Origin: Isurus oxyrinchus
Taxonomy: Eukaryota
Assembly: GCA_026770705.1 (NCBI GenBank)
Contig: JANJGN010000088.1
Span: forward strand, 1,240,001 to 1,304,000
Direction of reading: 5' to 3'
DNA length: 64,000 nt
The position numbers and the translations under genes were made by a program. Of the stretch, positions 21,833 through 55,501 are shown piece by piece; within the stretch, counting starts at the first letter, position 1, and each line of letters begins with the position of its first letter. The notes under the pieces were generated by a model. It had not been told where the DNA came from and made no database searches. It saw nothing but the letters and a program-made list of their open reading frames with translations.

Positions 21833-22523
21833 CTTTAAAATAAACAGCGGAGTAAGATACATGTGTGTGCCAATCATATATCAGGTGGTATCACCCAAAA
21901 AGCCAGGTAGTCTGTCTGTCTGTTAGGAAATGGACCCCGAATGACAGGGGATTTGTCCTTATTCTGGGGGATGGACCCTAAAGCAAAAGGGGTCTGTCCT
22001 TATTCTGGGAGACGAAGCCTGCAAAATGAATTCTTCTTTGCGCTCCAGACCGTGATCATTGAGGATTCTGTTGTTCAGGGTCACAGTTACTGTCATGTGT
22101 TTCCCAAGGTTAAATGTCGTGTAACCCAGCAGAACAAACTGCCCTTGTTCTTGGAGACAGGGGCCTAAAGGACAAGTGGTCTAATTAAATTCTGGGCAGT
22201 GGATGCAAAAGGAGAGGTGGTCTGACCCGATTCTGGGACATGGGGCCTTAAGGACAGGTTGTCTGACCCTGTTCAGGGACATGGGCCTAAAGGACAGGGA
22301 ATCTGACCTTCTGGGGTGAATCAAGACCCTCAGATCAGGTAAAGAGAAAATCTTCAAGGTGCCAGTGGCTGTGAAAGGTTGCCCACTGTGCTGTCCGTCT
22401 GCACCCAGTCTGGTAGCTGGAATCTCAGAGTCAGATAATAAGATGTGGCGATAAATTGAAGATAAATCATGACTTTACTGTATGGGTACGTTGTTGTTCA
22501 TTTGATAGTTAAAGTCTGGTTAC

Positions 22524-22666
22524 CTTGACAACAGTAACAAAGGTGCTGTAGAGGAAACTTAGAATAAACAGAATGGCGAAGGCAGCAACTGTCAGTGCGT
22601 TGTCGTCTCCTTCCAAACCTTCCACTTCTTCCTTTCCTTCCTCTCCTATCATATTTGGAAGGTCAA
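22524..22666 (-). CDS. IgW: IgW TM1' (distal transmembrane exon)
   Basis: TTTCAG|xDLPNMIGEEGKEEVEGLEGDDNALTVAAFAILFILSFLYSTFVTVVK|GTAACC; acidic spacer and Ig CART-type TM motif; 143 nt, phase 1/0. Confidence 0.9.
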
Positions 22667-23389
22667 CTGAAACAAAGAGAAATTGGAGCTGATAAAGATG
22701 ACACTGGGCATTTCATCAAGGTCCACAATGTCTCAGTTTGAAGATAATAGCGAGGGAGGAGATCACAGCGGAGGAGAACTGGGAGCTGTGAATAATTAAA
22801 AAGTCTTTCTCTCTTGACCTGTCACTTCTGGTCCTGTCTCCCACTTTGTCTTTCTCCCTCTCTCACTGCCTTTCCTCTATCTCTCAGAGATTCTGTCCCC
22901 TTGTTTCTGCTTCACTGTCACTCTCAGTATCTCTGTCTGTAACACTTACTGTTTCTCTCAAATGTGCACAAACAACAGATGATGCTAAAACTGTTTCCAA
23001 AATCTCAGTCCTTCAGTCACCCCAGTTGTTTCCTCATTTCTCTATCGTATTATCCAATCTACCAGTTCAAACACAAGTTTTCAACTCCCTGACTCCAAAA
23101 ACACTCTAATCCGCAAACAAACCATTGATTGTGAAGCGCCCTGAGATTATCCCCATCGCCAGGGTGAGATTTTTAATGACTTCAAATATTTATTTCTTTT
23201 TGAATCTCTGCTTCTATAACATTTTAATCAATCTAATAGTTCCTGAGGCAGCATTAAATGAACTTGTGTAGTCACCAGGTACAACAACTGCTCAATGGCA
23301 CAAATTCTTGTGAGTGGTGATGTGAGCGAGTGAGGCACCAAATGGGATCAGAAAGTCTGCGATTCATGGATTACTGTGATGTGGTTTTG

Positions 23390-24014: not shown

Positions 24015-24435
24015 GAAATTGGATCAGTACATTGACATTTTGCCACATACGAAACACTTTTGAAAAAGTTGCAGGCAGTAATCTGAACATTTGCTTTGAG
24101 AATATTTTGCTCAAGACCCAGAGAATCAGCCCATCCCTCCTTCCCATATCCACACTCTCTCCTGACTCCCCCTTCCTGACTCTCCCATTCCCATCTCCCC
24201 TGCTCCCCATTCCCACACACCTCTCACCTTCCTAATGCGTCCCTCCCATCCCAATTCCCCTTCCCAATCTTCCCCAGTCCTTTTGAAGTTTTATCTCCCA
24301 GAATGAGCTGTTGCAGTGCAGTAGCTGGGTATTTTCCAGTGTGTGATGGAAAGCTTCACTCCCAACATCACAGGGATATCTCTGGACAATTCACATCTTG
24401 TATAAGTCTGAATGTGAGCCGCATGTATCTGCTGG

Positions 24436-25204: not shown

Positions 25205-25660
25205 GGCTGTCCTACGGGGAAAGGTTGGACAGACTGGGCTTGTTTCCACTGGAGTTTAGAAGAGTGAGGGGTGATTTAATTGAAGTATACAAGATCCTGA
25301 ACAGCCTTGACAAGGTGCATGTGGAAAGGATGTTTCCTCTTGTGGGTGAGACCTGAACAGGGGGGCACTGTTTTAACATTAGGGGTCCACCTTTTCGGGC
25401 AGAGATGAGGAGAAATTTTTTCTTGGATGGGTGTGCGACTTTGGAATTCTCTGCCTCAGTTGGTGGTGGAGGCGGGGCCATTGAATATTTTTAAGGCAGA
25501 AGTAGATAGATTCTTGTTAGGCAAGGGCATCAAAGGTTATTGGGGTTAGATCAGAATGTGGAAATCGAAACACAAGAAGATCAGCCATGATCTTATTGAA
25601 TGGCGCAGCAGGTTCGATGGGCCGAATGGTCTACTCCTGTTCCTATTTCTTATGTTCTTA
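25205..25660 (+). mobile_element. CR1 3' fragment present only in the proximal TM cassette
   Basis: GLFPLEFRRVRGDLIEVYKIL-type coding remnant plus CR1 3' UTR; absent from the 21430-24050 copy. Confidence 0.85.
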
Positions 25661-25944
25661 TTCTGGGCCATGGAGCCTTATGGACAGGTTGGCCTGTCCG
25701 TATTCTGGGACATGGGGCCTAAAGGACCCTTCTTCTGGGGTGAATCAAGACCCTCAGATCAGGTAAAGAGAAAATCTTCAAGGTGCCAGTGGCTGTGAAA
25801 GGTTCCCCACTGTGCTGTCCGTCTGCACCCAGTCTGATAGCTGGAATCTCAGAGTCAGATAATAAGATGTGGCGATAAATTGAAGATAAATCGTGACTTT
25901 ACAGTATGGGTACGTTGTTCATTTGATAGTTAAAGTCTGGTTAC

Positions 25945-26087
25945 CTTGACAACAGTAACAAAGGTGCTGTAGAGGAAACTTAGAATAAACAGAATGGCAA
26001 AGGCAGCAACTGTCAGTGCGTTGTCGTCTCCTTCCAAACCTTCCACTTCTTCCTTTCCTTCCTCTCCTATCACATTTGGAAGGTCAA
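25945..26087 (-). CDS. IgW: IgW TM1 (proximal transmembrane exon)
   Basis: TTTCAG|xDLPNVIGEEGKEEVEGLEGDDNALTVAAFAILFILSFLYSTFVTVVK|GTAACC; 143 nt. Confidence 0.92.
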
Positions 26088-27425
26088 CTGAAACAAAGAG
26101 AAATTGGAGCTGATAAAGATGACACTGGGCATTTCATCAAGGTCCACAATGTCTCAGTTTGAAGATAATAGCGAGGGAGGAGATCACAGCGGAGGAGCAC
26201 TGGGAGCTGTGAATAATTGAAAAGTCTTTCTCTCTTGACCTGTTGCTCCCCGGTCCTGTCTCCCACTTTGTCTTTGTCTTTCTCCCTCTCTCACTGCCTT
26301 TCCTCTATCCCTCAGAGATTCTGTCCCCTTGTTTCTGCTTCACTGTCGCTCTCAGTTTCTCTTTCTGTAACACTTACTGTTTCTCTCAAATGTGCACAAA
26401 CAACAGATGATGCTAAAACTGTTTCCAAAATCTCAGTCCTTCAGTCACCCCATTTCTCTATCATATTATCCAACCTACCAGCTCAAACACAAGTTTCTGA
26501 CTCCTTGGCTCCAAAAACACTCTAATCCGCAAACAAACCATTGATTGTGAAGCGCCCTGAGATTATCCCCATCGCCAGGGTGAGATTCTTAGTAACTTCA
26601 AATATTTACTTCTTTTTGAATCTCTGCTTCTATAACATTTTAATCAACCTAACAGTTCCTGAGGCAGCGTTAAATGAACTTGTGTAGTCACCAGGTACAA
26701 CAACTGCTCAATGGCACAAATTCTTGTGAGTGGTGATGTGAGCGAGTGAGACACCAAATGGGATCAGAAAGTCTGCAATTCATGGATTACCGTGATGTGG
26801 TTTTGTGCATCGCACTCTCGCCCCTGGATCAGAAAATTGTGGGTTCAAGTTCCACTCCAGATACTTGAGTGCATAATTCAGGCCGACACTCCAATGCAGG
26901 ACTGAGAAAGTGCTGCACTGCAGAAGGTGCCGCCTTTCAAATAAGGCATTAAACAATGGTATTGAGGTTGATGTAAACTTGTAAATGGTCCCACAGCACA
27001 ATTGGAAGAAGAGCAGGGGAGTACTCTGCAATGTTCTGAGCCAGCCAACATTTATCCCTCAACCAAAACACCTAAAACCAGATGATCTGGTCATTACCCC
27101 AGTTCTTATGGTGGGAATTACTGTGCGCAAATTGGAATTGGTAAACCAAGAAAGACCAAAGCCATCCTGATGTTCGGATGATACAAGGATAATGGAGTTG
27201 TGCACTAATCATAGCAACCAGTCTCTTATCAATTAGTCCACAATAAACCCAGACAGGAGGCAAGGTAAGCCCAATGGTGGGAGCATTGGAAACCATAGGT
27301 CCAAGGACCCCTGTTCCTCACAAGCATGTTACACTCACCGCACATCATGTTCGAAGATACTCATTTACTGTCTCCCGAAACACAACAATAATGAACACTC
27401 AAAACCGAAACCTTTTCACATTATG

Positions 27426-27431
27426 TTTATT
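27426..27431 (-). terminator. Poly(A) signal of the long secretory form
   Basis: First canonical AATAAA seen downstream of the CH10 stop (~335 nt). Confidence 0.65.
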
Positions 27432-27763
27432 GAAAATGGATCAGTACATTGACATTTTGCCACATACAATGAACCCTTCTTGGGGTCTCACACAGGTTTC
27501 ACACTTGGTCAAATGCAGCACAAAAAACGTTTGAAAACCAACTCAGGACTTCAGATGTTTGGAGAGAACGATGTTTGTTGTAGGATCAGATGGTTAAATT
27601 TAAATAATTTCTTTCTCAGTTATTGAACAAGGTCAGATTTTGTTCACATTTTCTAGTGATCTGCGACAAAAAGCGAGATTTCATAGCAACCATGACAATC
27701 CTCTGGTTGTCTTAACCATCCATTTACAGGGATTATGTAAATGGGTGATTGAATCATTAGATG

Positions 27764-28146
27764 CTATGAACAGGATTTGAAGCCTTCAGTTAGAACAAGT
27801 GACACATTGACCAGGGTGGGTTTGCTGTGAGATTTATTGATGCTCCTGAACAGATTTGTTGTGACTGACTCGTGTCCCACCACACAGGAGTAAGTGGTGC
27901 CGCTGTTCCACTCGTCTGCGGAGACTGTCAACCGACTGCCCGAGTTCCAGCCACTTCTGCCATCCTCGGTCACCGGCTGGTTCACAAATCCTGACTTCAG
28001 AAGGGTGTCGTTGGCCATCCAGGCCAGGTAGATCTCTGCAGGGGAGAATCCGGTGACCAGGCAAACCAGGGTCGCGGTGTGGTCTGTCTCCATCTCATCT
28101 TGTGAAGGGGGAAGGAGGTAGACTTGAGGGTGAGTCTTAATGTCAA
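27764..28146 (-). CDS. IgW: IgW terminal C exon (CH10) with long secretory tail
   Basis: C1-set Ig domain PQVYLLPPS...LVCLVTGFSP...W...YSCVVGHE, then tail KPTLVNVSLVLTEGFKSCS* with N-V-S sequon and penultimate Cys; TTCCAG acceptor. Confidence 0.95.
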
Positions 28147-29213: not shown

Positions 29214-29534
29214 CTTGGGCTTTCCTGATTGACCTCTTCTCAGGCGTTGGCAAACTCTTGTCCTCCACCAAACACAAATACTCTACCCCACTCTCCCACT
29301 CTGCAGCAAGGACTGTCAGTCTGCTGAAGATCATGTCTTTGTCTCCATTCCTCTTGGGACCCTGAGTCTTCACTCCATCTTCTCTCTTGATTCCATCCGC
29401 CTGCCAGGTTACCCTGACTCCCTCTAAATCACTGTGAAGTACCTCGCAAAGTATAGTCGCTGTCCTGTTCCTCCAGATCTCTTCAAAAGGAGGCTTCCTT
29501 AAGGTGACTGAGATCCCAGTGTCCAAACATTCAT
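29214..29534 (-). CDS. IgW: IgW CH9 exon
   Basis: ECLDTGISVTLRKPPFEEIW...ILCEV...W...YLCLVED; TCCTAG/GTACGT splice sites; 321 nt, phase 1-1. Confidence 0.93.
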
Positions 29535-30382: not shown

Positions 30383-30700
30383 GTTGGAAGTTCTTCACCG
30401 TCTCACTGGTGTTGAAGTTGGAGGGTGGATGAGACACTGCACAGGTGAAGGTTGAGCCTTTCCTCCATTCCTCTGCACTCACAGTCAGGTAGTGCCTGAC
30501 GCAGAATGTCCTGGCCTGTTCCAGAGCAGTGTGTCCAGCGTGGGCCTTGGAGGAGATCACAGCACCATCTTTCTCCCAGGTGACATTTATGAGGTCTGGG
30601 TAGAATCCAGTGATCACACACTGGAGTGTGGCTGTGCTCTTACCCTTGATCTCTTCAGTTGGTTGAAACAGCAATCTGACCTTGGAACTTTTTGTCTCGA
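30383..30700 (-). CDS. IgW: IgW CH8 exon (type B, divergent copy)
   Basis: ETKSSKVRLLFQPTEE...LQCVITGFYP...W...FTCAVSHPPS; TTCCAG/GTATGT; 318 nt. Confidence 0.92.
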
Positions 30701-30790: not shown

Positions 30791-31093
30791 CTTTTACACT
30801 CTTTGCCCGTTTTGAAATGGGTGAGGATGAGGAACCACTTTGAGCAGAGCACACGAACTCCACCCCGCTGTCCCATTCCTCCGCAGTGGTTCGGAGTCGG
30901 CTGGTGACGATGTATTGTGTTCCTTCCTCTCTCTGTCGCTGGGTTGAAACCCCTTTACTTCGCTCCTGCCCGTTCATGTTCCAGGTGATGCGGACCTGGC
31001 TCGGATTGGAACGGACCACTATACACACCAGGGTAGCTGTCTTGTTGATCCAAACCTCTTCCATAAGTGGACTTTGGATAAAGACAGATATTT
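30791..31093 (-). pseudogene. IgW: IgW CH7 exon (type A): open frame but canonical splice acceptor destroyed
   Basis: Near-identical to CH3, but the acceptor reads CCCAAAATATC instead of CCCAG|AAATATC (1-nt deletion); donor intact. Confidence 0.8.
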
Positions 31094-33704
31094 TGGGAAG
31101 GGGAAATTATACAAATCAGAAGAACGGGCATTAATTAGTATCAGCCACTTGTGGCCTTCAATAGGAATCCAGTTTAATGTGTTTCACCTGGAGCTGCTAA
31201 TCGATCATGCGACACTGCACCTAAATATTTTAACAAGTTGAACATTAGAAAATCCCAGGGTTGTTTAAAAAATGTCTTGCAATTCTCAGTTTGCAAGTTT
31301 TGACTGAGAAAACATCGTAGGACAAGCAAGAACCCACTGGATCCCTTTTGAATCTGTCTGCCCTTACCGTGACCAAGAGATCCACAGTGAGGACTGCAGT
31401 TGAGTTGTGGGGTGAGTGGCTTTTAGATGCGACAATGTTACTAACAATGCAATCTCTGGTTTGTGAAATGGAGTGAAACAGAGATACAAACTGCTTAGCA
31501 AAAGGAACAATTCAGTAAATGCTTTTTCACTGCGTGGGGCTGTGGAATGATTTTTGATGTTGAGCACACTGAATGAACGAAGGGCCCATTTCTTTTAGCT
31601 GCGGCTCAGTTGATAGCACGCTCACCTCCGAATCAGAAGGTTGTGGATTCATGTCCCACAAAACTCAAAGTTGATGCCCCAGTGCAATACTGAGGGAGTG
31701 CTGCGCTGTCGGAGCACTGCCTTTTGGATGAGAATTGAAAATGAGGCGCCAAATGCCGCCTTAGGTAGATGTAAAAGAAGGACATCAGGGAAGATCGTTT
31801 CAATACCCTGATCAGTATATATCCCTCACTCAACATCACAAAAACAGGATCCCTGGTATTTGTCACATTACTCTTTGTGGGAACTTGCTGTGTATAAATT
31901 GGCTGCTGTGTTTCCAACTTTACAACAGTGGCTGCACTTCAAAAGTACTTCATTTTGGCATGTCCTGTGGTCACGAAAGATGACATGTAAATGTGAGCCT
32001 TTCTTTACTTTTCTTCCTCTAATTGGAGCCGGCCCGGATCACATCAGTTTTAAAATTCTTATCCTAATGTTCACGGCTTCACCTCTCCCTATCTCTGTAA
32101 TCTTCTCCAGCCCTACAGCCGCCCAGAAACTCTGCACAACTCTAGACACTTGTACATCCTTATCTTCCTTTCCCCCTGCATTGGTGGCTGTGTCTTCAGC
32201 CGTCTAGGCCCTAATGCCTGGAATTCACTGCCTAAACCTCAGCCACCTGCCACCTCTCTCCTCATTTGAGATGCTGCTTAAAACCTCTCTATTTTGCCAA
32301 GATTTTGGCCACAAGATCTCCTCCTGGAGGCTCAGCATCAGTTTTGCTTTGGCTTTGGTCCTGTGAAGCACCTTGGGATGTTTTACTACATTAAAGTCTC
32401 TATATCGATTCAAGTTATCATTGGTGATCATTCCCTGTCAAAGAAGGTTAGTTTGCATTGGCAGAGCAACTCCCATGAATCAGGGGAGTAACAGAAGTCC
32501 CCTCTTCCTGCAGGTTGGGGATCATTTCTGCATAACACGGACTTCCCCTCATTTCATTCCGGAGTTTACCGGCCTGGGAAGGGAATGATTGATTGAATTC
32601 TTCACATTTTCTCCTTTGTGCTCAACTCCCACGGATCGCAATCTCTTCAGATATCCCGCAGCTCACTGCGTGTTCTGTATACTGTTAACACAGACACACA
32701 CGCATATACACACAGACACGCACATGCACACACACATTCACTGCGTGAATCACAACTGCTTTGATCCACACTAATTGTTCTCGCTCAATGTAATGTTAAC
32801 ACTTACAGAGTGACTGGATTACTTCATCTGTGTCCATATCAAAACCTGTCATGAACACCACATATTGACTCTTCCGGCTGCAGTTTCAGCTGATGTTCAG
32901 TGTCTGTCTAATAGGACTGTGTCTTTTATTAGGTTATTTATTCTGTTTCTCTCTCTCTTGCCTTTTAAACAAAACCTTGATCAATTTCCTTCCAGATTGG
33001 GATTGCTCAGTATATTAATGATTAAGTCTAGGTGTTTTTCACGTTGATCTCCCATCATAAAACCTCATAGGGTTGGGAACAATCCCCTTATCACTGTAAA
33101 ATAATAACATTATTGGGCAAGAGGTGTTTAATTCCATTTATCCTTTGTGCGGAATTTTGAAAAAACACTTCCCTGACTTGGATTCCTGTGAACATTGAGC
33201 TCCTGACATTGACTGAGATGAGTATCCAGACTGGGAGAGTGATGGGAACTGTTTCTATTTCTGCAACCCAGAATTTCATCTAAAACAGACCAGGCCATTC
33301 AGGGCACCAGTTAAATCCTTGTGTGCTGAATCACCAACTTGCCTCAGGATCATTGAAGGGGGCCAATCCGGCTATTTCACTGGATCAATGAGTCCTACTC
33401 CAGCACCTCCCAACCTCCCGGCCTCTCTGGGTGACAAACAGGCTTCTAATCCTTTCCAACTTGAGAGTCAGACTTGAGAGACAATGGTCAGTCGGTGGGG
33501 TCGGGTCCCTATTCACTCTGACCCAGCGCAGGTCACAAAGAAATGACCATTCAGATAAGGAGTGGGTTGTCTGGGGGAACCCAAACTAGGGCTGTAACTT
33601 CTCGCAGTATTCACACTTTCATTCTGACGGATACCCTGGGATAGATTTGAACCTGCCAGATGGTTTGTAATAAAATTCAACGACCAATTCCATTCACAAA
33701 CTCA

Positions 33705-33856
33705 TCACTTTATTTCACATTTTTGTTGGTAGCAGTCATATTGGAGCTGATCACCATTTTTGAGGGTCACATTGAGGTTAGTCTGGTAGAGAAACTTCGG
33801 CATACAGTCAGAACAAGAACAAGGAGAACATGGAACTGGACGACATGCGTTTCCAC
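33705..33856 (-). CDS. IgW: Cysteine-rich secretory tail exon secA' (after CH6)
   Basis: TTCCAG|(G)GNACRPVPCSPCSCSDCMPKFLYQTNLNVTLKNGDQLQYDCYQQKCEIK*; 152 nt; AATAAA at 33709-33714. Confidence 0.85.
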
Positions 33857-34234
33857 CTGGAACTGGAAGAGTTGCAGATTTAAGTGTTATGCATTTTCAC
33901 CTCCCCTCCCCTCTACTGGGGAAGTGGGAGCTCCATGCAGCCCCTGGCCTCTGCTCTGTCCTGTCTTCTAAAGATCCTAAAAGAACTAGATCATGTAGAC
34001 ACTGACGAGCTGTTTTTACCTTGTCCAGAACAGTAAAATCAGTGGGTATGGCCTCTGTTTGAAGGGGGCAGGATGAACAATTGTTCTTTCTTTACTTGGC
34101 CTCTAGATTACTCGTCCACCTAGGTAATAACTACATCACCACACCTACGTTGTGAGTTTGAATTTGCCTGGCCCCAAGAGAATTTATATGAGAAGACCAT
34201 GATGTCAAGATTGGAATCAGGCCCAGGACCTTAC

Positions 34235-34552
34235 CTGGGACATTCTTCACCTCCTTGCTGATGACGAAGTTGGAAAGTGGATGAGACACTGTACAGCTGA
34301 AGGCTGATCCTGTCCTCCACTCCTCTGCACTCACAGTCAGGTAGTGCCTGACATTGAAAGTCCCTGCCTGTTCCAGAGCGGTGAGTCCAGCATGGGTGTT
34401 GGAGGAGATCGGAACACCATCTTTCTGCCAGGAGACGTGTAAGAGCTCTGGGTAGAATCCAGTGATCACACACTCGAGTGTGGCTGTGCTCTGATTCTTG
34501 ACCTCTTGGGCTGGGGGAGGCAGCAGCCTGACCTTGGGACTTTTTGGCTCGA
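34235..34552 (-). CDS. IgW: IgW CH6 exon (type B)
   Basis: EPKSPKVRLLPPPAQE...LECVITGFYP...FSCTVSHP; AG/GTAAG; 318 nt; protein identical to CH4. Confidence 0.93.
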
Positions 34553-34642
34553 CTGGAATAGACAGGCAAAACAAAGAAGCTGTTAAATTCCTTCCCTGAA
34601 AGTGAACAAAGTTAGTTATGTAATTTCTGATCTCTCACCCAC

Positions 34643-34945
34643 CTTTTACACTCTTTACCCGTTTTGAAATGGGGGAGGATGAGGAACCACTTTGAGCAGA
34701 GCACACGAACTCCACCCCGCTGTCCCATTCCTCCGCAGTGGTTCGGAGTCGGCTGGTGACGATGTATTGTGTTCCTTCCTCTCTCTGTCGCTGGGTTGAA
34801 ACCCCTTTACTTCGCTCCTGCCCGTTCATGTTCCAGGTGATGCGGACTTGGCTCGGATCTGAACAGACCACTTTACACACCAGGGTAGCAGTCTTGTTGA
34901 TCCAAACCTCTTCAACAGAAGGATTTTGGATAAAAACTGACATTT
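34643..34945 (-). CDS. IgW: IgW CH5 exon (type A)
   Basis: MSVFIQNPSVEEVWINKTATLVCKVVC...W...FVCSAQ; CCCAG/GTGGG; 303 nt. Confidence 0.93.
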
Positions 34946-36656
34946 CTGGGAAGCGGAAAGTGAAAACTTCAGAAGGATTGACATTATCTGGTGTTGGCAG
35001 CCTTCAGAATTTTAGGGTGGTCTCTCCCTACTGATGTTGGTGGATGATAGGTCAACACAGAAGTGACTTTAAACTGCCACCTGTTTTAATCTCTTGAGTT
35101 AATACTGGGTGAAATACACAGCATTTAAGTTTGCAGCAAACTGAGCCTTTAGAAAATCCAAGGGTCGCTTTAGCAATGTCTAGTAATTCTTGACTCGCAT
35201 GTTATGATTGAGAAAACATAATCAGAGCACTAAGAACCTGCCGTATCCATTTTGAATTTGTTTGCTGTGCCTGTGACCAATAGGCCCACAGTGAGGAGTG
35301 CAATTGCATTCTAGGACTGAGCAACATTTAGATGTGACACTGTGAATCAATTGCAAAGCCCAGTTTGTTAAATGGAGTGAGGCAGATGCAGATCGCTTAG
35401 CAATGGAAACAATTGAATAAAGGCTTATTTACTTACAGCCCCTCCACCTCCCCGCTGTTGTATGGTTGATTTGTGACACTGAGCAGATTGAATCAATGAG
35501 GTGCCCTTTTTGGAGACAGCCTCGGATTGCCTCCATTTCAAAATCCTTATCCTAGTGTTGACATCTCGCTGGCCTTGCCTCTCCATATCTCTGTCACATT
35601 TGCCAGCCCAATAACCGTCTGAAAATGCTGCTTTCCACCAACATTAACCTCTTGTACACCCCACACTCCCTTCGCCCTAACAGTAGCAGCTGTCCATCAG
35701 CCATCTAGACCCTGCTCTGTGTAAGTCTATCCCTGAATCACAATTACATGGCCAACCCTCTCTCCTCCTTTAAGACGCTCCATAAAAACGACCTCTGCCC
35801 CCGCCTCCTCCTTTGGTTCTTTATCAATTTCTGTCCGATTACTCTCCAATGCAGAACTTTAGACCTCTGTCCACACTAAAGGTGATATATAAAAGCAGGT
35901 TATTGTAGATAAGTCTCTGTGAAGATAGATGATTAGTGTGCAGTGGCAGAGCAAGCCACAAATCAGATGTAGTGACAGCTCCTTTGCTGGAGCTCGGGGA
36001 TAATTTATGCAAAACGTTTACATCCCATCTCCAGTTTCATGTCCAAGAGACTAGATAAAAAGCAAATGTTTTACCGAGTACTTCATACGTTTTCCCCATT
36101 GCCAGCAGTTTCCCAAAAGACCATTGTCACTTCAGATATCCCGCAGCTCACTGCGTGTTCTGAACACTATTCACGCGCACAAACACACATTCACTGTGCG
36201 AATCACAACTCTTCTCCCTCTATATAATGAACAGTAGACACTTGGGTATGATGGGAAGGATGACAATTACTGCATCAGGATCAAATCCTTTCATGAGCTT
36301 CGAGAACCAACTCCTCCGGCTGCAGTTTCAGATGATGTCCTGTACACAGGGTGGTGGGATTTTCCAATGGCCATTTGGGTGGCTCGCCACATCTGCTGCA
36401 GAGGGACCCACTGCAGTGGAGCCAGAAAATCCCGGCCAGTGTCTGACAAGACCCTATCTTTCATTAACTTGAGATGGGTGAACGGAAGAGTTTATCACTT
36501 CTGCTGCCATGGATTTCCATCCAGAACCTACCGGATTGTACAGGAGCCAGATGGAACCCTGCAGCCGGTCTCAGCGGTTTGCCTCAGGACCAGCATCATT
36601 GAAATGGGACAGCCTTCTTTTACTGGCTCAACGTGATTCAATTCACAACCAGCCCA

Positions 36657-36829
36657 TCACCGAATTTCACACATTTGTTGACAACATTTATACTGGCATG
36701 GATCAGCATCAGAGAAGGTCATGTTACAGTTAATCTGATATAGGAACCTCAGCATCCAGCCAGAACAAGAATCAGTCAGACAAGAGCAAGCAGCATTTCC
36801 ACCCGGAACAGGAAGATTTGTGTTTCCAC
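36657..36829 (-). CDS. IgW: Divergent cysteine-rich secretory tail exon secB (after CH4)
   Basis: TTCTAG|(G)GNTNLPVPGGNAACSCLTDSCSGWMLRFLYQINCNMTFSDADPCQYKCCQQMCEIR*; 173 nt; frame open; homologous to secA. Confidence 0.78.
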
Positions 36830-37207
36830 CTAGAACTGGAAGAGCTGCGGATTTAAGTGTTATGCATTTTCACCTCCCCTCCCCTCTACTGGGGAAGTGG
36901 GAGCTCCATGCAGCCCCTGGCCTCTGCTCTGTCCTGTCTTCTAAAGATCCTAAAAGAACTGGATCATGTAGACACTGACAAGCTGTTGTTACCTTGTCCA
37001 GAACAGTAAAATCAGTGGGAATGGCCTCTGTTTGAAGGGGGCAGGATGAACAATCGTTCTTTCTTTACTTGGCCTCTAGATTACTCGTCCACCTAGGTAA
37101 TAACTACATCACCACACCTACGTTGTGAGTTTGAATTTGCCTGGCCCCAAGAGAATTTATATGAGAAGACCATGATGTCAAGATTGGAATCAGGCCCAGG
37201 ACCTTAC

Positions 37208-37525
37208 CTGGGACATTCTTCACCTCCTTGCTGATGACGAAGTTGGAAAGTGGATGAGACACTGTACAGCTGAAGGCTGATCCTGTCCTCCACTCCTCTG
37301 CACTCACAGTCAGGTAGTGCCTGACATTGAAAGTCCCTGCCTGTTCCAGAGCGGTGAGTCCAGCATGGGTGTTGGAGGAGATCGGAACACCATCTTTCTG
37401 CCAGGAGACGTGTAAGAGCTCCGGGTAGAATCCAGTGATCACACACTCGAGTGTGGCTGTGCTCTGATTCTTGACCTCTTGGGCTGGTGGAGGCAGCAGC
37501 CTAACCTTGGGACTTTTTGGCTCGA
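37208..37525 (-). CDS. IgW: IgW CH4 exon (type B)
   Basis: Ig C1 domain; TTCCAG/GTAAG; 318 nt; 89-nt intron from CH3. Confidence 0.93.
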
Positions 37526-37614
37526 CTGGAATAGACAGGCAAAACAAAGAAGCTGTTAAATTCCTTCCCTGAAAGTGAACAAAGTTAGTTATGTAATTTC
37601 TATCTCTCACCCAC

Positions 37615-37917
37615 CTTTTACACTCTTTGCCCGTTTTGAAATAGGAGAGGATGAGGAACCACTTTGAGCAGAGCACACGAATTCCACCCCGCTGTCCCAT
37701 TCCTCCGCAGTTGTTCGGAGTCGGCTGGTGACGATGTATTGTGTTCCTTCCTCTCTCTGTCGCTGGGTTGAAACCCCTTTACTTCGCTCCTGCCCGTTCA
37801 TGTTCCAGGTGATGCGGACCTGGCTCGGATTGGAACAGACCACTTTACACACCAGGGTAGCTGTTTTGTTGATCCAAACCTCTTCCATAAGTGGACTTTG
37901 GATAAAGACAGATATTT
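37615..37917 (-). CDS. IgW: IgW CH3 exon (type A)
   Basis: ISVFIQSPLMEEVWINKTATLVCKVVC...; CCCAG/GTGGG; 303 nt. Confidence 0.93.
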
Positions 37918-40527
37918 CTGGGAAGGGGAAATTATACAAATCAGAAGAACGGGCATTATTTAGTATCAGCCACTTGTGGCCCTCAATCAGAACCCAGTTT
38001 AATGTGTTTCACCTGGAGCTGCTAATCGATCATGCGACACTGCACCTAAATATTTTAACAAGTTGAACATTAGAAAATCCCAGGGTTGTTTAAAAAATGT
38101 CTTGCAATTCTCAGTTTGCAAGTTTTGACTGAGAAAACATCGTAGGACAAGCAAGAACCCACTGGATCCCTTTTGAATCTGTCTGCCCTTACCGTGACCA
38201 AGAGATCCACAGTGAGGACTGCAGTTGAGTTGTGGGGTGAGTGGCTTTTAGATGCGACAATGTTACTAACAATGCAATCTCTGGTTTGTGAAATGGAGTG
38301 AAACAGAGATACAAACTGCTTAGCAAAAGGAACAATTCAGTAAATGCTTTTTCACTGCGTGGGGCTGTGGAATGATTTTTGACATTGAGCACACTGAATG
38401 AACGAAGGGCCCATTTCTTTTAGCTGCGGCTCAATTGGTAGCATGCTCATCTCCGAATCAGAAGGTTGTGGATTCATGTCCCACAAAACTCAAAGTTGAT
38501 GCCCCAGTGCAATACTGAGGGAGTGCTGCACTGTCGAAGCACTGCCTTTTGGATGAGAATTGAAAATGAGGCGCCACATGCCGCCTTAGGTAGGCGTAAA
38601 AGAAGGACATCAGGGAAGCTTGTTCCAATACCCTGATCAGTATATATCCCTCACTCAACATCACAAAAACAGGATCCCTGGTATTTGTCACATTACTCTT
38701 TGTGGGAACTTGCTGTGTGTAAATTGGCTGCTGTGTTTCCAACTTTACAACAGTGGCTGCACTTCAAAAGTACTTCATTTTGGCATGTCCTGTGGTCACG
38801 GAAGATGACATGTAAATGTGAGCCTTTCTTTACTTTTCTTCCTCTAATTGGAGCCGGCCCGAATCACATCAGTTTTAAAATTCTTATCCTAATGTTCACG
38901 GCTTCACCTCTCCCTATCTCTGTAATCTTCTCCAGCCCTACAGCTGCCCAGAAACTCTGCACAACTCTAGACACTTGTACATCCTTATCTTCCTTTCCCC
39001 CGGCATTGGTGGCTGTGTCTTCAGCCGTCTAGGCCCTAATGCCTGGAATTCACTGCCTAAACCTCAGCCGCCTGCCACCTCTCTCCTCATTTGAGATGCT
39101 GCATAAAACCTCTCTATTTTGCCAAGATGTTGGCCACAAGATCTCCTCCTGGAGGCTCAGCATCAGTTTTGCTTTGGCTTTGGTCCTGTGAAGCACCTTG
39201 GGATGTTTTACTACATTAAAGTCTCTATATCGATTCAAGTTATCATTGGTGATCATTCCCTGTCAAAGAAGGTTAGTTTGCATTGGCAGAGCAACTCCCA
39301 TGAATCAGGGGAGTAACAGAAGTCCCCTCTTCCTGCAGGTTGGGGATCATTTCTGCATAACACGGACTTCCCCTCATTTCATTCCGGAGTTTACTGGCCT
39401 GGGAAGGGAATGATTGATTGAATTCTTCACATTTTCTCCTTTGTGCTCAACTCCCACGGATCACAATCTCTTCAGATATCCCGCAGCTCACTGCGTGTTC
39501 TGTATATTGTTAACACAGACACACACGCATATACACACAGACACACACATGCACACACACATTCACTGCGTGAATCACAACTGCTTTGATCCACACTAAT
39601 TGTTCTCGCTCAATGTAATGTTAACACTTACATAGAGACTGGATTACTCTATCTGTGTCCATATCAAAACCTGTCATGAACACCACATATTAAGTCTTCC
39701 GGCTGCAGTTTCAGCTGATGTTCAGTGTCTGTCTAATAGGACTGTGTCTTTTATTAGGCTATTTATTCTGTTTCTCTCTCTCTTGCCTTTTAAACAAAAC
39801 CTTGATCAATTTCCTTCCAGATTGGGATTGCTCAATATATTGATGATTAAGTCTAGGTGTTTTTCACGTTGATCTTCCAAGATAAAACCTCATAGGGTTG
39901 GGAACAGTCCCCTTATCCCTGTAAAATAATAACATTATTGGGCAAGAGGTGTTTAATTCCATTTACCCTTTGTGCGGAATTTGACAAAACACTTCCCCAA
40001 CTTGGATTCCTGTGAACATTGAGCTCCTGTCATTGACTAAGATGAGGATCCAGACTGGGAGAGTGATGGGAACTGTTTCTATTTCTGCAACCCAGAATTT
40101 CATCTAAAACAGACCAGGCATTTCAGGGCACCAGTTAAATCCTTGTGTGCTGAATCACCAACTTGCCTCAGGATCATTGAAGGGGGCCAATCCGGCCATT
40201 TCACTGGATCAATGAGTCCCACTCCAGCATCTCCCAACCTCCCGGCCTCTCTGGGTGACAAACAGGCTTCTAATCCTTTCCAACTTGAGTCAGACTTGAG
40301 AGACAACGGTCAGTCGGTGGGGTCAGGTCCCTATTCACTCTGTCCCAGCGTAGGTCACAAAAAAAATGACCATTTAGATCAGGAGAGGGTTGTCTGGGGG
40401 AACCCAAACTAGGGCTGTAACTTCTTGCAGTATTCACACTTTCATTCTGATGGATACCCTGGGATAGATTTGAACCTGCCAGATGGTTTGTAATAAAATT
40501 CAACGGCCAATTCCATTCACAAACTCA

Positions 40528-40679
40528 TCACTTTATTTCACATTTTTGTTGGTAGCAGTCATATTGGAGCTGATCACCATTTTTGAGGGTCACATTGAGG
40601 TTAGTCTGGTAGAGAAACTTCGGCATACAGTCAGAACAAGAACAGGGAGAACATGGAACTGGACGACATGCGTTTCCAC
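40528..40679 (-). CDS. IgW: Cysteine-rich secretory tail exon secA of short IgW (after CH2)
   Basis: TTCCAG|(G)GNACRPVPCSPCSCSDCMPKFLYQTNLNVTLKNGDQLQYDCYQQKCEIK*; 7 Cys, N-V-T sequon, AATAAA at 40532-40537; position matches the known 2-CH short IgW with a Cys-rich tail. Confidence 0.88.
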
Positions 40680-41640: not shown

Positions 41641-41949
41641 CCCCTTCGTTTCTCGTGTATCTCATGCTGATCCTCTTATTGAATCTTGAAAGTGTGTGGG
41701 ACACTTCACAGGCGTACTCAACCCCTTTCTTCCATTCCGCCACAGGAACAGTCAGGTAAGTGACTGTTTCAAATGTAGTGTCTGTGCTTTGTCGGGAAGT
41801 CAGAACATTACCCGCTTTGTCCTCCTGGCCTTTCTTCCAGGAAACCTTTATGCCGTCGGGATCAAATCCGGATATCATACAGCCCAGGACAGTGGTAGTT
41901 TGATTGTAGACAAACTCCGCGGATGGAACAAGGGTGGTGACAATCGGCG
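41641..41949 (-). CDS. IgW: IgW CH2 exon
   Basis: PIVTTLVPS...LGCMISGFDP...W...YACEVSH; TCCAG/GTAAGT; 309 nt. Confidence 0.94.
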
Positions 41950-42349: not shown

Positions 42350-43715
42350 TTCCCCCAGTAACCTTTGACTCCCTTGTTAGTCAAGAATCTATCTTCATCT
42401 GCCTTAAAAATATTCATTGTCCCTGTTTCCACCGCTCTCTGGGTAAGAGAGTTCCAAAGATTCACGACACCATGAGAGAAAAAGATTTCTTCTCATCTCC
42501 ATCTTAAATGGGAGACCCCTTATTTTCAAACTGTTCCCCCAAGATCAAGTCTCTCCCACAAGGGGAAATGTCCTTTCAGCATCCGCCCTGTCAAGTCCCC
42601 TCAGGATCTGATATGTTTCAATGAGATCACCTCTCAATTTTCTAAACTCCAATGGATACAGGCCCAGCCTGTCCAACCTATCCTCATGAGATAACGCCCC
42701 CATCCCAGGTATCAGTTGAGTGAACCTTCTTTGAACTGCTTCTAATGATTTAAACACTTTCCTAAATAAGCAAGACCAAAACTGGACACTGTACCCTTGA
42801 TGTGGTCCCACCAATGTCCCATACAACTGTAGCAAAACACCCCTACTTTTCTATTCCATTCGCATTGCAATAAGCAACAACATTCCATTTGCCTTCTGAA
42901 CCACTTGCTGTGTCTATATTCTAACTTCTCCTGATTCATGTACCAGGACACTCAGATCCCTCTGCTCTTCAGAGTTGTGCAGTCTCTCTCCATTTAAATA
43001 ATATGCTGCTTTTCTATTCTTCCTGCCAAAGTAGACAAGTTCACATTTTCCCACGTTATACTCCATCTGCCAAATTTTTGCCACTCACTTAACCTATCTA
43101 TGTCCCTTTGCAGACTCCTTATATCCTCTTCACAACTTACTTTCCTACCTTTCTCTGTGTCATCAACAAATTTAGGAACTATACATTCGGTCCCTTCATC
43201 CAAGTCATTGATATAAATTGTAAATATTTGAGGCCTCAGCACTGATCCCTGTGACACTGTACTCATCACATCTATTCAACACAAAAAAGACCCATTTGTC
43301 CCTATTCTCTGCTTCCTGTTAGCTAACCAATACTCCATCCATGCTAATATATTTCTCCCTACACCAGGAGCTCTTATCTTGCATCATAATTTTTTATGTG
43401 GCATCTTGTCAGATGCCTTCTGGAAATCTAAGCACAGCACATCCACAAGTTCCCCTTTATGGATGTTGCTTGTTACTTACTTATAGAACTCCAATAAATT
43501 AGTTAAACATGATTTCTCTTTCACAAAGCCGTGTTGATTCTGCCTCATTGCATTGAGCTTTTCTAAGTGCCCCGCTATAACTATTTAATATCAGATTCCA
43601 GCAGTTTCCCTACAATAGATTTTAAACAAACTGGCCTGCAGTTTTCTGCTTTCGGTCTCCTTCCTTTCTTGAATAGAGGAATCACAGTCACAATTTTACA
43701 ATCTGATGGGACCTA
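42350..43715 (-). mobile_element. CR1 LINE RT/3' fragment in the CH1-CH2 intron
   Basis: QGSVL...FTIYINDL...KFVDDT (42994..43269); VQRRFT...GDLIE (42545..42835). Confidence 0.9.
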
Positions 43716-43903: not shown

Positions 43904-44218
43904 CTTTAGGTTTCATGATCTGACGCTCCACCATTTCATTTGACTTGTAACCCGCCTTACAGTGGTAGACTGTTTTGGCATTCCAATCTGATGCAGAGAC
44001 TTTGAGCACGCTGCTCATCATGTAATTCTTATCATTCCCCTGGACTGCCGCATACGTCTGAATTCCAGTGGTAATGACCCGATTGTTACTGGACCATATC
44101 AGAGTGATGCTCTTAGCATGAAAGTCCTTGACCAGGCAGAAGAAGCTGATCTCATCTTGGTCCCTGTCCATGCCACAGGAAGGGTTGGGGATGAAGACCG
44201 ATGGTGCAAACTGGGCAA
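43904..44218 (-). CDS. IgW: IgW CH1 exon
   Basis: [17 protein letters not shown]...FFCLVKDF...W...YHCKAG; the extra Cys in PSCG sits at the usual light-chain-bonding position; TTTCAG/GTTAG; 315 nt. Confidence 0.94.
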
Positions 44219-44404: not shown

Positions 44405-46150
44405 CAGTGTAGAGGGAGCTTTACACTGTATCTAACCGCGAGCTGTACCTGTCCTGGGTGTGTTTGATGGGGACGGTGTAGAGGGAGCTTTACTCTGTAT
44501 CTAACCCCATGCTGTACCTGTCCTGGGAGTGTTTGATGGGGACAGTGTAGAGGGAGCTTTACACTGTATCTAACCGCGAGCTGTACCTGTCCTGGGTGTG
44601 TTTGATGGGGACAGTGTAGAGGGAGCTTTACTCTGTATCTAACCCTGTGCTGTACCTGTCCTGTGTGTGTTTGATGGGGACAGTGTAGAGGGAGCTTTAC
44701 TCTGTATCTAACCCCGTGCTGTATCTGCCCAGGGAGTGTTTGATGGGGACAGTGTAGAGGGAGCTTTACTCTGTATCTAACCGCGAGCTGTACCTGTCCT
44801 GGGTGTGTTTGATGGGGACGGTGTAGAGGGAGCTTTACTCTATATCTAACCCCGTGCTGTACCTGTCCTGGCAGTGTTTGATGGGGACAGTGTAGAGGGA
44901 GCTTTACTCTGTATCTAACCCTGTGCTGTACCTGTCCTGTGTGTGTTTGATGGGGACAGTGTAGAGGGAGCTTTACTCTGTATCTAACCCCGTGCTGTAT
45001 CTGCCCAGGGAGTGTTTGATGGGGACAGTGTAGAGGGAACTTTACTATGTATCTAACCGCGAGCTGTACCTTTCCTGGGTGTGTTTGATGGGGACAGTGT
45101 AGAGGGAGCTTTACTCTGTATCTGACCCCGTGCTATACCTGTCCTGGGAGTGTTTGATGGGGACAGTGGAGAGGGAGCTTTACACTGTATCTAACCGCGA
45201 GCTGTACCTGTCCTGGGTGTGTTTGATGGGGACAGTCTAGAGGGAGCTTTACTCTGTATCGAACCCCGTGCTGTACCTGTCCTGGGAGTGGTTGTTGGGG
45301 ACAGTGTAGACGGAGCTTTACTCTGTATCTAACACCGTGCTGTACCTTTCCTGGGAGTGTTTGATGGGGACAGTGTAGAGGGAGATTTACTCTGTATCTA
45401 ACCCCATGCTGTACCTGTCCTGGGAGTGTTTGATGGGGAAAGTGTAGAGGGAGCTTTACTCTGTATCTAACCCCGTGCTGTACCTGCCCTGGGAGTGTTT
45501 GATGGGGACAGTGTAGAGGGAGCTTTACTCTGTATCTAACCCCGTGCTGTACCTGCTGTGGGACTGTTTGATGGGGACAGTGTAGAGGGAGCTTTACTCT
45601 GTATCTTACCCCGTGCTGTATCTGTCCTGGGAGTGTTTGATGGGGACAGTGTAGAGGGTGCTTTTCTCTGTATCTAACCCCGTGCTGTACCTGCCCTGGG
45701 AGTGTTTGATGGGGACAGTGTAGAGGGAGCTTTACTCTGTATCTTACCCCGTGCTGTATCTGTCCTGGGAGTGTTTGATGGGGACAGTGTAGAGGGAGGT
45801 TTACTCTGTATCTAACCCCGTGCTGTACCTGTCCTGGGAGTGTTTGATGGGACAGTGTAGAGGGAGGTTTACTCTGTATCTAACCCTGTGCTGTACCTGC
45901 CCTGGGAGTGTTTGATGGGGACAGTGTAGAGGGAGCTTTACTCTGTATCTTACCCGGTGCTGTATCTGTCCTGGGAGTGTTTGATGGGGACAGTGTAGAG
46001 GGAGCATTACTCTGTATCTAACCCCGTGCTGTACCTGTCCTGGAAGTGTTTGATGGGGATAGTGTAGAGGGAGATTTACTCTGTATCGAACCCCATGCTG
46101 TTCTTGTCTTGGGAGTGTTTGATGTGATGGTGTCGAGGGAGATTTACTAA
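44405..46150. repeat. 69-bp minisatellite, ~25 copies, just upstream of CH1
   Basis: Unit cagtgtagagggagctttactctgtatctaaccccgtgctgtacctgtcctgggagtgtttgatgggga; period 69 (44405 to 44474). Confidence 0.96.
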
Positions 46151-49200: not shown

Positions 49201-49358
49201 AAGAAGTATTTGGATGTGCACTTGCAATGCCATGGCATAGAAGGCTATGGGCCTAGTGCTGGAAAATGGGATTAGAATGGTTAGGTACTTGTTTGACCGG
49301 CGCAGACTCAATGGGCTGAAGGGCCTTTTTCTGTGCTGTAGACCTTGCTGACTCTAAG
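46210..49358 (+). mobile_element. CR1 LINE, near full-length inactivated ORF2, with a ~155-bp unrelated AT-rich insert at ~48450-48605
   Basis: YFNARS, DFDFP, GNYRPVSLTS, GVPQGSVLGP, KFADDTK, GIWNSLP motifs and a CR1 3' UTR. Confidence 0.93.
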
Positions 49359-55093: not shown

Positions 55094-55389
55094 TCTTGCA
55101 CAGTAATAGGTGGCGGTGTCGTCCACTCTCAGATAAGGAATCTCAATGGAGGTTGTGGAAGATTCAGTTGAAAACGTGATTCGACTCTGAACTCCAGGCG
55201 CGTAGTAAGTGCTATATCCTTGATGGTAACTAAGTAACCATTCCAGCCCTTTCCCAGGGACCTGTTTCACCCAGTGCATCCTGTAGCTGCTGAGACTGAA
55301 CCCACTCACTGTACAGGACAGTGTGACAGAGTGCCCCGGCTTTTTCACAGCTGATTTGGGCTGGGTCAGCACGACAGCGGACCAGACAC
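55094..55389 (-). CDS. IgW: IgW VH exon (germline, unrearranged)
   Basis: AVVLTQPKSAVKKPGHSVTLSCTVSGFSLSSYRMHWVKQVPGKGLEWLL...RITFSTESSTT...YYCAR; canonical Cys/Trp/Cys; short FR3 as in shark IgW V; TTAACAG acceptor. Confidence 0.96.
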
Positions 55390-55501
55390 CTGTTAATAAA
55401 AGAGAAAAAGAAGTTAATAAACCCATTGCACAAAGAGAGGGTCAAAGAGTCTCTGAATAAGCAGCCGCTCTGTGTGGGGATAAAGCCACAGGACCCCTCA
55501 C

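What the first reader, a model, noticed from the sequence alone, without database searches (positions are those of the whole stretch)
33705..40679. Three Cys-rich secretory-tail exons interleaved among the C exons: a built-in size ladder of secreted IgW
Seen: three phase-1 terminal exons absent from the ORF track, each with an intact AG acceptor, open frame and stop. They are secA after CH2 (40528-40679), secB after CH4 (36657-36829) and secA' after CH6 (33705-33856), in addition to the classical tail on CH10. Established: cartilaginous-fish IgW has a short 2-CH form with a Cys-rich tail and longer forms made by alternative RNA processing. Inference: this one cluster can put the same VDJ on secreted chains with 2, 4, 6 or 9/10 C domains and three different tail sequences, by choosing among poly(A)/splice exits. 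That is isotype-like diversification without DNA switching. I do not know of a described locus with a Cys-rich exit repeated after every CH pair, but I cannot search to confirm novelty.
Basis: partly seen in the sequence, partly recalled or inferred. Interest (0 to 1): 0.92.

Follow-up and report, generated by a model that had tools for sequence, protein, structure and literature searches.

The report
Shark IgW gene with three secretory exits
A shark IgW antibody gene has its middle pair of constant exons in three copies and three short cysteine-rich "stop here and secrete" exons among them, which extends by one module a design already published for nurse shark IgW.

Summary
On the minus strand lie three phase-1 terminal exons, each with an AG acceptor, an open frame and a stop: secA 40679-40528, secB 36829-36657 and secA' 33856-33705. 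They follow CH2, CH4 and CH6 of a ten-exon IgW cluster, which reads V-D-J, CH1, CH2, three CH3-CH4-type pairs, CH9, CH10 with tailpiece, then duplicated TM exons.

The tails belong to the known Cys-rich tail family of IgW-short and IgX-short (horn shark, sawshark, nurse shark, skates). secA and secA' encode the same peptide. secB is 53% identical to secA and lacks AATAAA.

The novelty claim is too strong. Nurse shark IgW already has a deposited chain with four C domains and a paralogous Cys-rich tail after CH4 (AGY29600.1). It also has chains with eight C domains (AGY29605.1, AGY29606.1). Reviews report secreted forms with 2, 4, 6 or 8 C domains. New here are a third exit after CH6, ten C exons and a different shark; among hits the basking shark is closest.

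RNA-type contigs show a secA/secA'-type exon spliced at the predicted acceptor. They give no coverage of secB and do not identify the upstream exon. There is no exit after CH8, and CH7 has lost its acceptor AG. First-stage notes report two similar clusters elsewhere in this genome (unchecked).

The parts
43904..44218 (-). CH1 exon (315 nt, phase 1 at both ends)
   Evidence: Pfam C1-set E 8.6e-16. Splice sites. 81% identical to basking shark 'pancreatic IgW, short secretory form-like'.
41641..41949 (-). CH2 exon; donor AAGGGG|gtaagt feeds secA 961 nt downstream, or CH3
   Evidence: C1-set E 6.5e-16. 67% identical to horn shark IgW secreted form and 82% to basking shark IgW short.
40528..40679 (-). 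secA: Cys-rich secretory terminal exon after CH2 (49 aa plus a junction Gly, 7 Cys, NVT sequon, stop). AATAAA at 40537-40532 overlaps the last codons, with GT-rich sequence just downstream.
37615..37917 (-). CH3 exon (first copy of the CH3-type exon)
   Evidence: C1-set. Donor at 37615 confirmed by a spliced contig joining 37615 to a CH4-type acceptor (X4 record 10). 71-73% identical to nurse shark CH3.
37208..37525 (-). CH4 exon; donor TCCCAG|gtaagg lies 378 nt upstream of secB
   Evidence: C1-set E 1e-19. 75-77% identical to nurse shark CH4, with the same ending, EVKNVP against EVKNVQ.
36657..36829 (-). secB: diverged Cys-rich terminal exon after CH4 (56 aa, 8 Cys, NMT sequon, stop at the homologous position). 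No AATAAA; the nearest variant is AGTAAA at 36624-36619, 33 nt after the stop.
   Evidence: No RNA-contig coverage in four runs.
34643..34945 (-). CH5 exon (second CH3-type copy; 19 of 303 nt differ from CH3)
   Evidence: CH5-specific contigs in run X1 end or branch at 34945 and 34643 (records 2-4).
34235..34552 (-). CH6 exon (second CH4-type copy; 3 nt differ from CH4). Same donor as CH4, 378 nt upstream of secA'.
33705..33856 (-). secA': recent copy of secA placed after CH6. Identical peptide, AATAAA at 33714-33709, and an extra in-frame AG 6 nt upstream that secA lacks.
   Evidence: Contigs X1 record 1 (33699-33857, 0 mismatches, 29 more letters beyond the acceptor) and X4 record 9 (33721-33863, 0 mismatches).
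30791..31093 (-). CH7 exon (third CH3-type copy) with an intact frame. Its acceptor AG is lost through a 1-bp deletion (cccag|AAAT has become cccaAAAT).
30383..30700 (-). CH8 exon (older, diverged CH4-type copy; 56 of 318 nt differ from CH4). No tail exon follows it.
29214..29534 (-). CH9 exon, the canonical IgW CH5
   Evidence: 84% identical to nurse shark IgW CH5; C1-set
27764..28146 (-). CH10 exon, the canonical IgW CH6, carrying the classical mu-like tailpiece ...KPTLVNVSLVLTEGFKSCS*
   Evidence: 86.5% identical to the nurse shark last domain plus tailpiece
25930..26090 (-). TM1 exon, proximal copy (...DDNALTVAAFAILFILSFLYSTFVTVVKV); approximate borders
   Evidence: Lies in a 1.8-kb duplication (22230-24050 against 25660-27467, 94.5%).
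22510..22670 (-). TM1 exon, distal copy; approximate borders
55094..55400 (-). Germline VH exon ending ...DTATYYCAR, followed by the RSS heptamer CACAGTG at 55093. D and J RSS pairs lie at 54684-53537. Approximate 5' border.

Best explanation
This is a germline, unrearranged IgW (omega, the IgD orthologue) heavy-chain minilocus of a shark. A module made of a secretory terminal exon followed by a CH3-type and a CH4-type exon is present three times. The layout is V-D-J, CH1, CH2, [secA, CH3, CH4], [secB, CH5, CH6], [secA', CH7, CH8], CH9, CH10 with tailpiece, then two TM cassettes.

The three short exons are members of the known Cys-rich tail family of IgW-short and IgX-short. They have a 3' splice site but no 5' splice site, and they carry their own stop. 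secA and secA' also carry AATAAA.

After CH2, CH4 or CH6 the transcript therefore has two options. It can splice into the nearby tail exon and be cleaved and polyadenylated, giving secreted chains with 2, 4 or 6 C domains. Or it can splice on to the next CH exon and end at the CH10 tailpiece or the TM exons.

Shown here: the exons, their frames and signals, their homology, and that a secA/secA'-type exon is spliced in RNA-type contigs. Inferred: that all three exits are used, and the competition between polyadenylation and splicing, by analogy with nurse shark IgW and the Ig mu secreted/membrane choice.

secA' arose recently by a duplication or unequal exchange with a breakpoint next to the tail-exon acceptor. 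secA and secB are old paralogues.
For: Exons, frames, AG acceptors, stops and poly(A) hexamers are. All ten CH exons are Pfam C1-set with lengths divisible by three.

Module structure comes from self-BLAST: 40895-37205 matches 34072-30380 at 95%, and 37959-36636 matches 34987-33687 at 91.6%. The flanks are mosaic: upstream of the acceptor secA' matches secB at 97%, while the exon and the downstream sequence match secA at 99% and 95.5%.

Tail family membership: horn shark P83743 and P83742 'IgW chain C region, secreted form' at E 1e-16; sawshark 'splenic IgW, short secretory form-like' at E 3.5e-15; nurse shark IgW short; skate IgX short.

Nurse shark AGY29600.1 has four C domains and a paralogous Cys-rich tail directly after a CH4 ending EVKNVQ. 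AGY29605.1 and AGY29606.1 have the CH3-CH4 pair twice.

RNA-type contigs: X1 record 1 covers 33699-33857 with no mismatch and then continues with 29 unlike letters, which is a splice at the predicted acceptor. Its other end lies about 10 nt past AATAAA. CH3, CH4 and CH5 contigs end at the predicted borders.

secA against secB gives dN/dS 0.35 and dS 0.95, with an in-frame 21-nt length difference and a shared stop position. V with RSS and the TM exons are present.
Against: No contig in four runs touches secB. secB has no canonical poly(A) hexamer. It is the most divergent member of the whole tail family, at 34-51% identity where the others share 54-78%.

The upstream partner of the spliced secA/secA'-type contigs could not be read. 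They may be ordinary CH2-secA short-form transcripts, or may come from paralogous clusters.

The runs are Logan contigs only guessed to be RNA, and one label (organism A) may be another species.

CH7 has no acceptor AG, so a true ten-domain chain from this cluster is doubtful.

The dN/dS rests on only about 29 synonymous sites. The upstream intron of secA against secB (77% identity) is less diverged than the exon (69%), so the neutral yardstick is uncertain.
Confidence: 0.75

Rival explanations
1. Only the classical exit is functional. secA makes the ordinary IgW-short chain. secB is a slowly decaying relic, and secA' is an unused passenger of a recent segmental duplication whose third module is already degenerating.
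For: secB has no AATAAA. It has replaced the conserved Cys before the core with Trp, is the most divergent tail in the family and has zero contig coverage in four runs. CH7 in the same recent module has lost its acceptor. No contig shows a CH4-secB or CH6-secA' joint.
Against: secB keeps a 57-codon open frame, the stop at the homologous position, the N-x-T sequon, an ancestral NLPVPGGN stretch shared with horn shark, and dN/dS 0.35 against secA. In nurse shark the exit after CH4 is used (AGY29600.1). secA' has the same acceptor context as secB, an intact AATAAA, and a donor upstream that is identical to that of CH4. Both RNA contigs carry the secA' base T at 33822, and one appears to use the AG 6 nt upstream that secA lacks. 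Contigs show presence, not absence.
Confidence: 0.2
2. Assembly artefact: the repeated module and its tail exons are a falsely expanded duplication of a single CH3-CH4 unit.
For: The three units are similar (91-95%). DNA runs hold only 0.42-0.44 of the sampled words of the stretch.
Against: The copies are clearly different sequences. secB is only 69% identical to secA. The introns between tail exon and next CH exon are 2.6, 1.7 and 2.6 kb long. CH8 differs from CH4 at 56 of 318 nt and CH5 from CH3 at 19 of 303. False duplications are normally near-identical. CH5-specific contigs exist in an independent run. First-stage notes report the same layout in another cluster 280 kb away (unchecked).
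Confidence: 0.03

Closest known systems
Nurse shark (Ginglymostoma cirratum) IgW clusters: Zhang, Du Pasquier & Hsu 2013, J Immunol 191:3410. The paper is not held here; its abstract, recalled from memory, speaks of two interspersed secretory exons. Proteins AGY29600.1, AGY29605.1, AGY29606.1, AAT02198.1.
   Same: V-D-J miniclusters with the CH3-CH4 exon pair duplicated. There is a Cys-rich secretory exon after CH2 and a paralogous one after CH4, plus a classical tailpiece on the last exon. Secreted forms of different length arise by RNA processing (PMC4279169, PMC5192425).
   Different: Here the pair is present three times, giving ten C exons against the six to eight reported, and a third Cys-rich exit sits after CH6. 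The species is different: CH1 and CH2 are only 52-58% identical to nurse shark and 81-82% to basking shark. The tail after CH4 is far more diverged from the tail after CH2 (51-53%) than in nurse shark (78%).
IgW-short / skate IgX-short secretory tail (Rumfelt et al. 2004, J Immunol 173:1129; horn shark P83742 and P83743; Raja eglanteria AAA75596.1)
   Same: The tail has the same architecture: a variable Cys-rich stretch followed by a conserved core, F/L-x-Y-Q/H-T/S-x-L-N-V-T-(L/F)...Q-Y-x-C-x3-C-E/K-I-K. It is encoded on a separate exon joined in phase 1 to CH2.
   Different: In those descriptions the tail is a single exit after CH2. Here it occurs three times and also follows CH4 and CH6.
IgD of teleosts, lungfish and reptiles with tandemly repeated C-delta exon blocks
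   Same: The orthologous isotype, in which blocks of C exons duplicate and alternative splicing gives chains with variable domain number (PMC4279169, PMC6795676).
   Different: No terminal secretory exon is carried inside the repeated block in those loci as described in these reviews.
Ig mu secreted/membrane choice in mammals (competition between poly(A) site and splice site); from general knowledge
   Same: One primary transcript, with the product set by whether an upstream poly(A) site is used before a downstream splice acceptor is reached.
   Different: There the secretory end is a read-through tailpiece of the last C exon, and there are two outcomes. Here there are separate alternative last exons and four or more outcomes.

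Membership tests
Cartilaginous-fish IgW (omega) heavy-chain minicluster | Germline VH, D and J segments with RSS directly upstream of its own C exons | tested here: met
   An open VH exon ends in YYCAR with heptamer CACAGTG at 55093. Paired heptamers lie at 54684/54662 and 53957/53936, and a J-side heptamer at 53537.
Cartilaginous-fish IgW (omega) heavy-chain minicluster | C1-set constant exons homologous to named IgW C domains, ending in canonical CH5 and CH6 with a mu-like tailpiece | tested here: met
   All ten exons are C1-set. CH1 and CH2 are 81-82% identical to basking shark IgW short. CH9 and CH10 are 84% and 86.5% identical to nurse shark IgW CH5 and CH6. The tailpiece reads KPTLVNVSLVLTEGFKSCS.
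Cartilaginous-fish IgW (omega) heavy-chain minicluster | Transmembrane exons downstream | tested here: met
   Two TM1 copies encode ...TVAAFAILFILSFLYSTFVTVVKV, near 26000 and 22600.
IgW-short / IgX-short Cys-rich secretory tail exon | Sequence homology to tails of expressed IgW-short chains | tested here: met
   Profile hits to horn shark P83743 (E 1e-16) and sawshark IgW short (E 3.5e-15). The conserved core is shared with nurse shark, skates and sawfish.
IgW-short / IgX-short Cys-rich secretory tail exon | Separate exon with a phase-1 acceptor, its own stop and a poly(A) signal, and no donor | tested here: met
   Met for secA and secA', where AATAAA overlaps the last codons. For secB the acceptor, frame and stop are met, but only the weak variant AGTAAA is present.
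IgW-short / IgX-short Cys-rich secretory tail exon | Found spliced to the preceding CH exon in mRNA | tested here: inconclusive
   A secA/secA'-type contig is spliced at the predicted acceptor, but the upstream exon was not readable. No coverage of secB.
IgW cluster with interspersed secretory exons (nurse shark type) | More than one Cys-rich terminal exon placed among the C exons, including one after CH4 | tested here: met
   secA follows CH2, secB follows CH4 and secA' follows CH6. Nurse shark AGY29600.1 has the homologous CH4-tail junction.
IgW cluster with interspersed secretory exons (nurse shark type) | Tandem duplication of the CH3-CH4 pair | tested here: met
   Three pairs here; two pairs in AGY29605.1 and AGY29606.1.
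IgW cluster with interspersed secretory exons (nurse shark type) | Transcripts for each length class | tested here: inconclusive
   Only contigs of four runs could be laid, once, on 6 kb. No CH4-secB or CH6-secA' joint was listed.

The most novel reading that the evidence does not exclude
The unit of tail exon plus CH3 plus CH4 behaves as a self-contained evolutionary cassette. Each duplication lengthens the chain by two domains and also adds a new secreted size class. In this cluster all three exits are used. secB supplies a functionally distinct tail with a rewired cysteine pattern (8 Cys; the conserved Cys before the core is lost and three new ones appear inside the core). Because CH7 has lost its acceptor, the chain with six C domains ending in secA' is the main long secreted product.
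Probability: 0.25. Interest if true: 0.55.

Novelty: new variant of a known kind. Interest (0 to 1): 0.38.

Why it matters
IgW/IgD is the least understood ancient antibody class. Sharks vary its effector end by RNA processing rather than by classical class switching. This locus shows that the published nurse-shark design, with a Cys-rich exit after CH2 and another after CH4, is not peculiar to one species. It can also grow by adding whole modules of tail exon plus a CH pair. The locus gives precise junctions, diagnostic bases and tail peptides for testing whether chain length and tail type are regulated by tissue or by B-cell stage. It does not reveal a new principle.

Tried and rejected
1. 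The primary paper (Zhang et al. 2013) and two reviews (Hsu 2016; Matz et al. 2021) are not held. I relied on two open reviews and on the deposited nurse shark proteins instead.

2. Full-text searches for 'secretory exon(s)' together with IgW found nothing.

3. A protein search scored on the sawshark tail alone returned only the query. The word index does not reach these short, variable tails.

4. Reads could be laid only once, on 6 kb, so CH2 and secA lay outside the stretch. All four runs are contigs. No joint from CH4 to secB or from CH6 to secA' was listed, and loose-end letters for the tail-exon contigs were not shown. This is neither support nor refutation. The '-' strand record coordinates are read by the usual BLAST/PAF convention, which I could not verify.

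5. A tail remnant after CH8 was sought by tblastn and blastn. None was found.

6. The idea that the window is nurse shark was rejected: CH1 and CH2 are 52-58% identical.

7. Orthology of secA and secB with the nurse shark tails after CH2 and CH4 could not be assigned. Paralogues within a species are more alike than across species, which fits either concerted evolution or independent duplication.

8. The AlphaFold model of the secA tail has mean pLDDT 62. Only a small three-stranded sheet at residues 24-48 reaches 65-81, so it is too weak for a fold search.

9. dN/dS rests on few sites, and the intron yardstick conflicts with it.


Full report
WHAT IS THERE

The window has no N runs. On the minus strand lies a complete germline IgW minilocus. 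An open VH exon ends in YYCAR with its RSS at 55093, followed by D and J RSS pairs.

A 25-copy array of a 69-bp unit and retroelement fragments fill the J-CH1 intron. Ten constant exons follow, each scoring as Pfam C1-set. Each has a length divisible by three and phase-1 borders.
- CH1 44218-43904
- CH2 41949-41641
- CH3 37917-37615
- CH4 37525-37208
- CH5 34945-34643
- CH6 34552-34235
- CH7 31093-30791
- CH8 30700-30383
- CH9 29534-29214
- CH10 28146-27764, ending in the classical tailpiece KPTLVNVSLVLTEGFKSCS

Two TM1 copies lie downstream.

THE THREE EXONS

Each has an AG acceptor, an open frame in phase 1 and a stop.
- secA lies 961 nt after the CH2 donor. secB and secA' each lie 378 nt after the identical CH4 and CH6 donors.
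- secA and secA' encode the same 49 residues and differ by one synonymous base.
- secB is 53% identical to secA, carries seven extra residues and stops at the homologous codon.
- secA and secA' have AATAAA overlapping their last codons, followed by GT-rich sequence. secB has lost the hexamer and has only AGTAAA, 33 nt past its stop.
- tblastn and blastn find exactly three copies in the window and nothing tail-like after CH8.

HOW THE LOCUS WAS BUILT

Self-comparison and alignments show three units, each made of a tail exon, an intron, a CH3-type exon and a CH4-type exon.
- CH4 and CH6 differ at 3 of 318 nt. CH3 and CH7 differ at 7 of 303, and CH3 and CH5 at 19 of 303.
- CH8 differs from CH4 at 56 of 318 nt, so it is the older copy. 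It is followed by canonical CH5 and CH6.
- Around secA' the sequence is a mosaic. Upstream of the acceptor it is 97% identical to the sequence before secB. The exon and the downstream sequence are 99% and 95.5% identical to secA. This points to a recent unequal exchange with a breakpoint next to the acceptor.
- secA and secB are old paralogues, with dS about 0.95 and dN/dS 0.35 on only about 29 synonymous sites.
- CH7 has lost the G of its acceptor AG by a 1-bp deletion, so a true ten-domain chain is doubtful.

WHAT THE TAILS ARE

A profile of the three tails, searched against 1.84 billion proteins, hit horn shark 'IgW chain C region, secreted form 2' (P83743, E 1e-16) and sawshark 'splenic IgW, short secretory form-like' (E 3.5e-15). 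A wider search added nurse shark 'IgW short', skate IgX-short-type chains and sawfish.

All share a variable Cys-rich stretch followed by the core F/L-x-Y-Q/H-T/S-x-L-N-V-T...Q-Y-x-C-x3-C-E/K-I-K.
- secB keeps an ancestral NLPVPGGN segment shared with horn shark.
- secB is otherwise the most divergent member. The Cys before the core is replaced by Trp, and three new Cys sit inside the core.
- An AlphaFold model of secA is weak (pLDDT 62). It suggests a disordered Cys-rich part and a small three-stranded sheet.

The species is not nurse shark: CH1 and CH2 are 52-58% identical. The nearest hit is basking shark, at 81-82%.

WHAT IS ALREADY KNOWN

Two open reviews give the published picture.
- PMC5192425 states that nurse shark has eight IgW loci with six to eight C exons.
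- PMC4279169 and PMC5192425 both state that secreted forms with 2, 4, 6 or 8 C domains arise by alternative splicing.

The primary paper (Zhang, Du Pasquier & Hsu 2013) is not held. From memory, its abstract speaks of two interspersed secretory exons besides the tailpiece.

I could confirm this from the deposited proteins.
- AGY29600.1 (595 aa, 'secreted IgW heavy chain') aligns to the window's CH1-CH4 and then ends in a Cys-rich tail. That tail is 78% identical to the nurse shark tail after CH2 and follows a CH4 ending EVKNVQ, where the window has EVKNVP.
- AGY29605.1 and AGY29606.1 (982 and 996 aa) contain the CH3-CH4 pair twice, then CH5 and CH6 with the tailpiece.

So repeated Cys-rich exits and a size ladder made by RNA processing are known. 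This locus adds a third pair and a third exit after CH6.

EXPRESSION

One search for runs and one laying of reads were allowed. I laid four contig-only, probably-RNA runs from four studies on 33300-39299.
- In X1, a 188-letter contig matches 33699-33857 without mismatch and then continues with 29 unlike letters. This is a splice at the predicted acceptor. Its other end lies about 10 nt after AATAAA.
- In X4, a contig matches 33721-33863 without mismatch. It appears to be joined 6 nt upstream, at an in-frame AG that exists before secA' and secB but not before secA.
- Both contigs carry T at 33822, the secA' state.
- The upstream exon could not be read, and paralogous clusters exist (first-stage notes, unchecked). 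Assignment to CH6-secA' is therefore suggestive only.
- CH3, CH4 and CH5 contigs end at the predicted exon borders. One spliced contig confirms the CH3-type donor and the CH4-type acceptor.
- secB has zero coverage in all four runs. Contigs show presence, not absence.

MECHANISM

Shown: the three exons have acceptors but no donors, carry stops, and (for secA and secA') carry strong poly(A) signals. Every CH donor is phase-compatible with them.

Inferred: after CH2, CH4 or CH6 the transcript either splices into the nearby tail exon and is polyadenylated, or splices on to the next CH exon. This would give secreted chains with 2, 4, 6 or 9-10 C domains, plus membrane forms. It parallels nurse shark IgW and the Ig mu secreted/membrane choice.

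Rough C-region sizes, from summing exon lengths without joining sequences:
- two C domains with tail A: about 258 aa
- four C domains with tail B: about 472 aa
- six C domains with tail A': about 672 aa
- nine or ten C domains with tailpiece: about 960-1060 aa

VERDICT

I rate it a new variant of a known kind, of moderate interest.

Noticed in passing
window 31085-31100 (minus strand): CH7 has lost the G of its splice-acceptor AG by a 1-bp deletion (cccag|AAAT in CH3 and CH5 has become cccaAAAT), while its reading frame stays open. Transcripts must skip it or use a cryptic AG at 31058/31057.
   Followed up: partly
window 44405-46148: A 25-copy tandem array of a 69-bp unit (91% matches) sits in the J-CH1 intron. 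That is where a switch-like or regulatory repeat might be expected; its function is unknown.
   Followed up: partly
window 22230-24050 and 25660-27467: A 1.8-kb tandem duplication (94.5%) downstream of CH10 gives two TM1 exons with nearly identical products (...TVAAFAILFILSFLYSTFVTVVKV).
   Followed up: partly
window 38500-39300 (twin copy about 31680-32480): An interspersed repeat inside the intron between the tail exon and CH3 attracts very high contig depth (up to about 13,600) and hundreds of partly matching contigs in all four runs. It is a widely transcribed repeat family, not part of the IgW message.
   Followed up: no
window 33857-33864 and 36830-36837 (minus strand): secA' and secB have a second in-frame AG 6 nt upstream of the main acceptor (cag|ttccag| and cag|ttctag|). 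secA has GG there. One contig in X4 seems to use it, which would add two residues at the junction.
   Followed up: partly
window 42545-43269 (minus) and 46788-49275 (plus): Reverse-transcriptase-like ORF fragments (LINE remnants) lie in the CH1-CH2 and J-CH1 introns.
   Followed up: no
   Followed up: no
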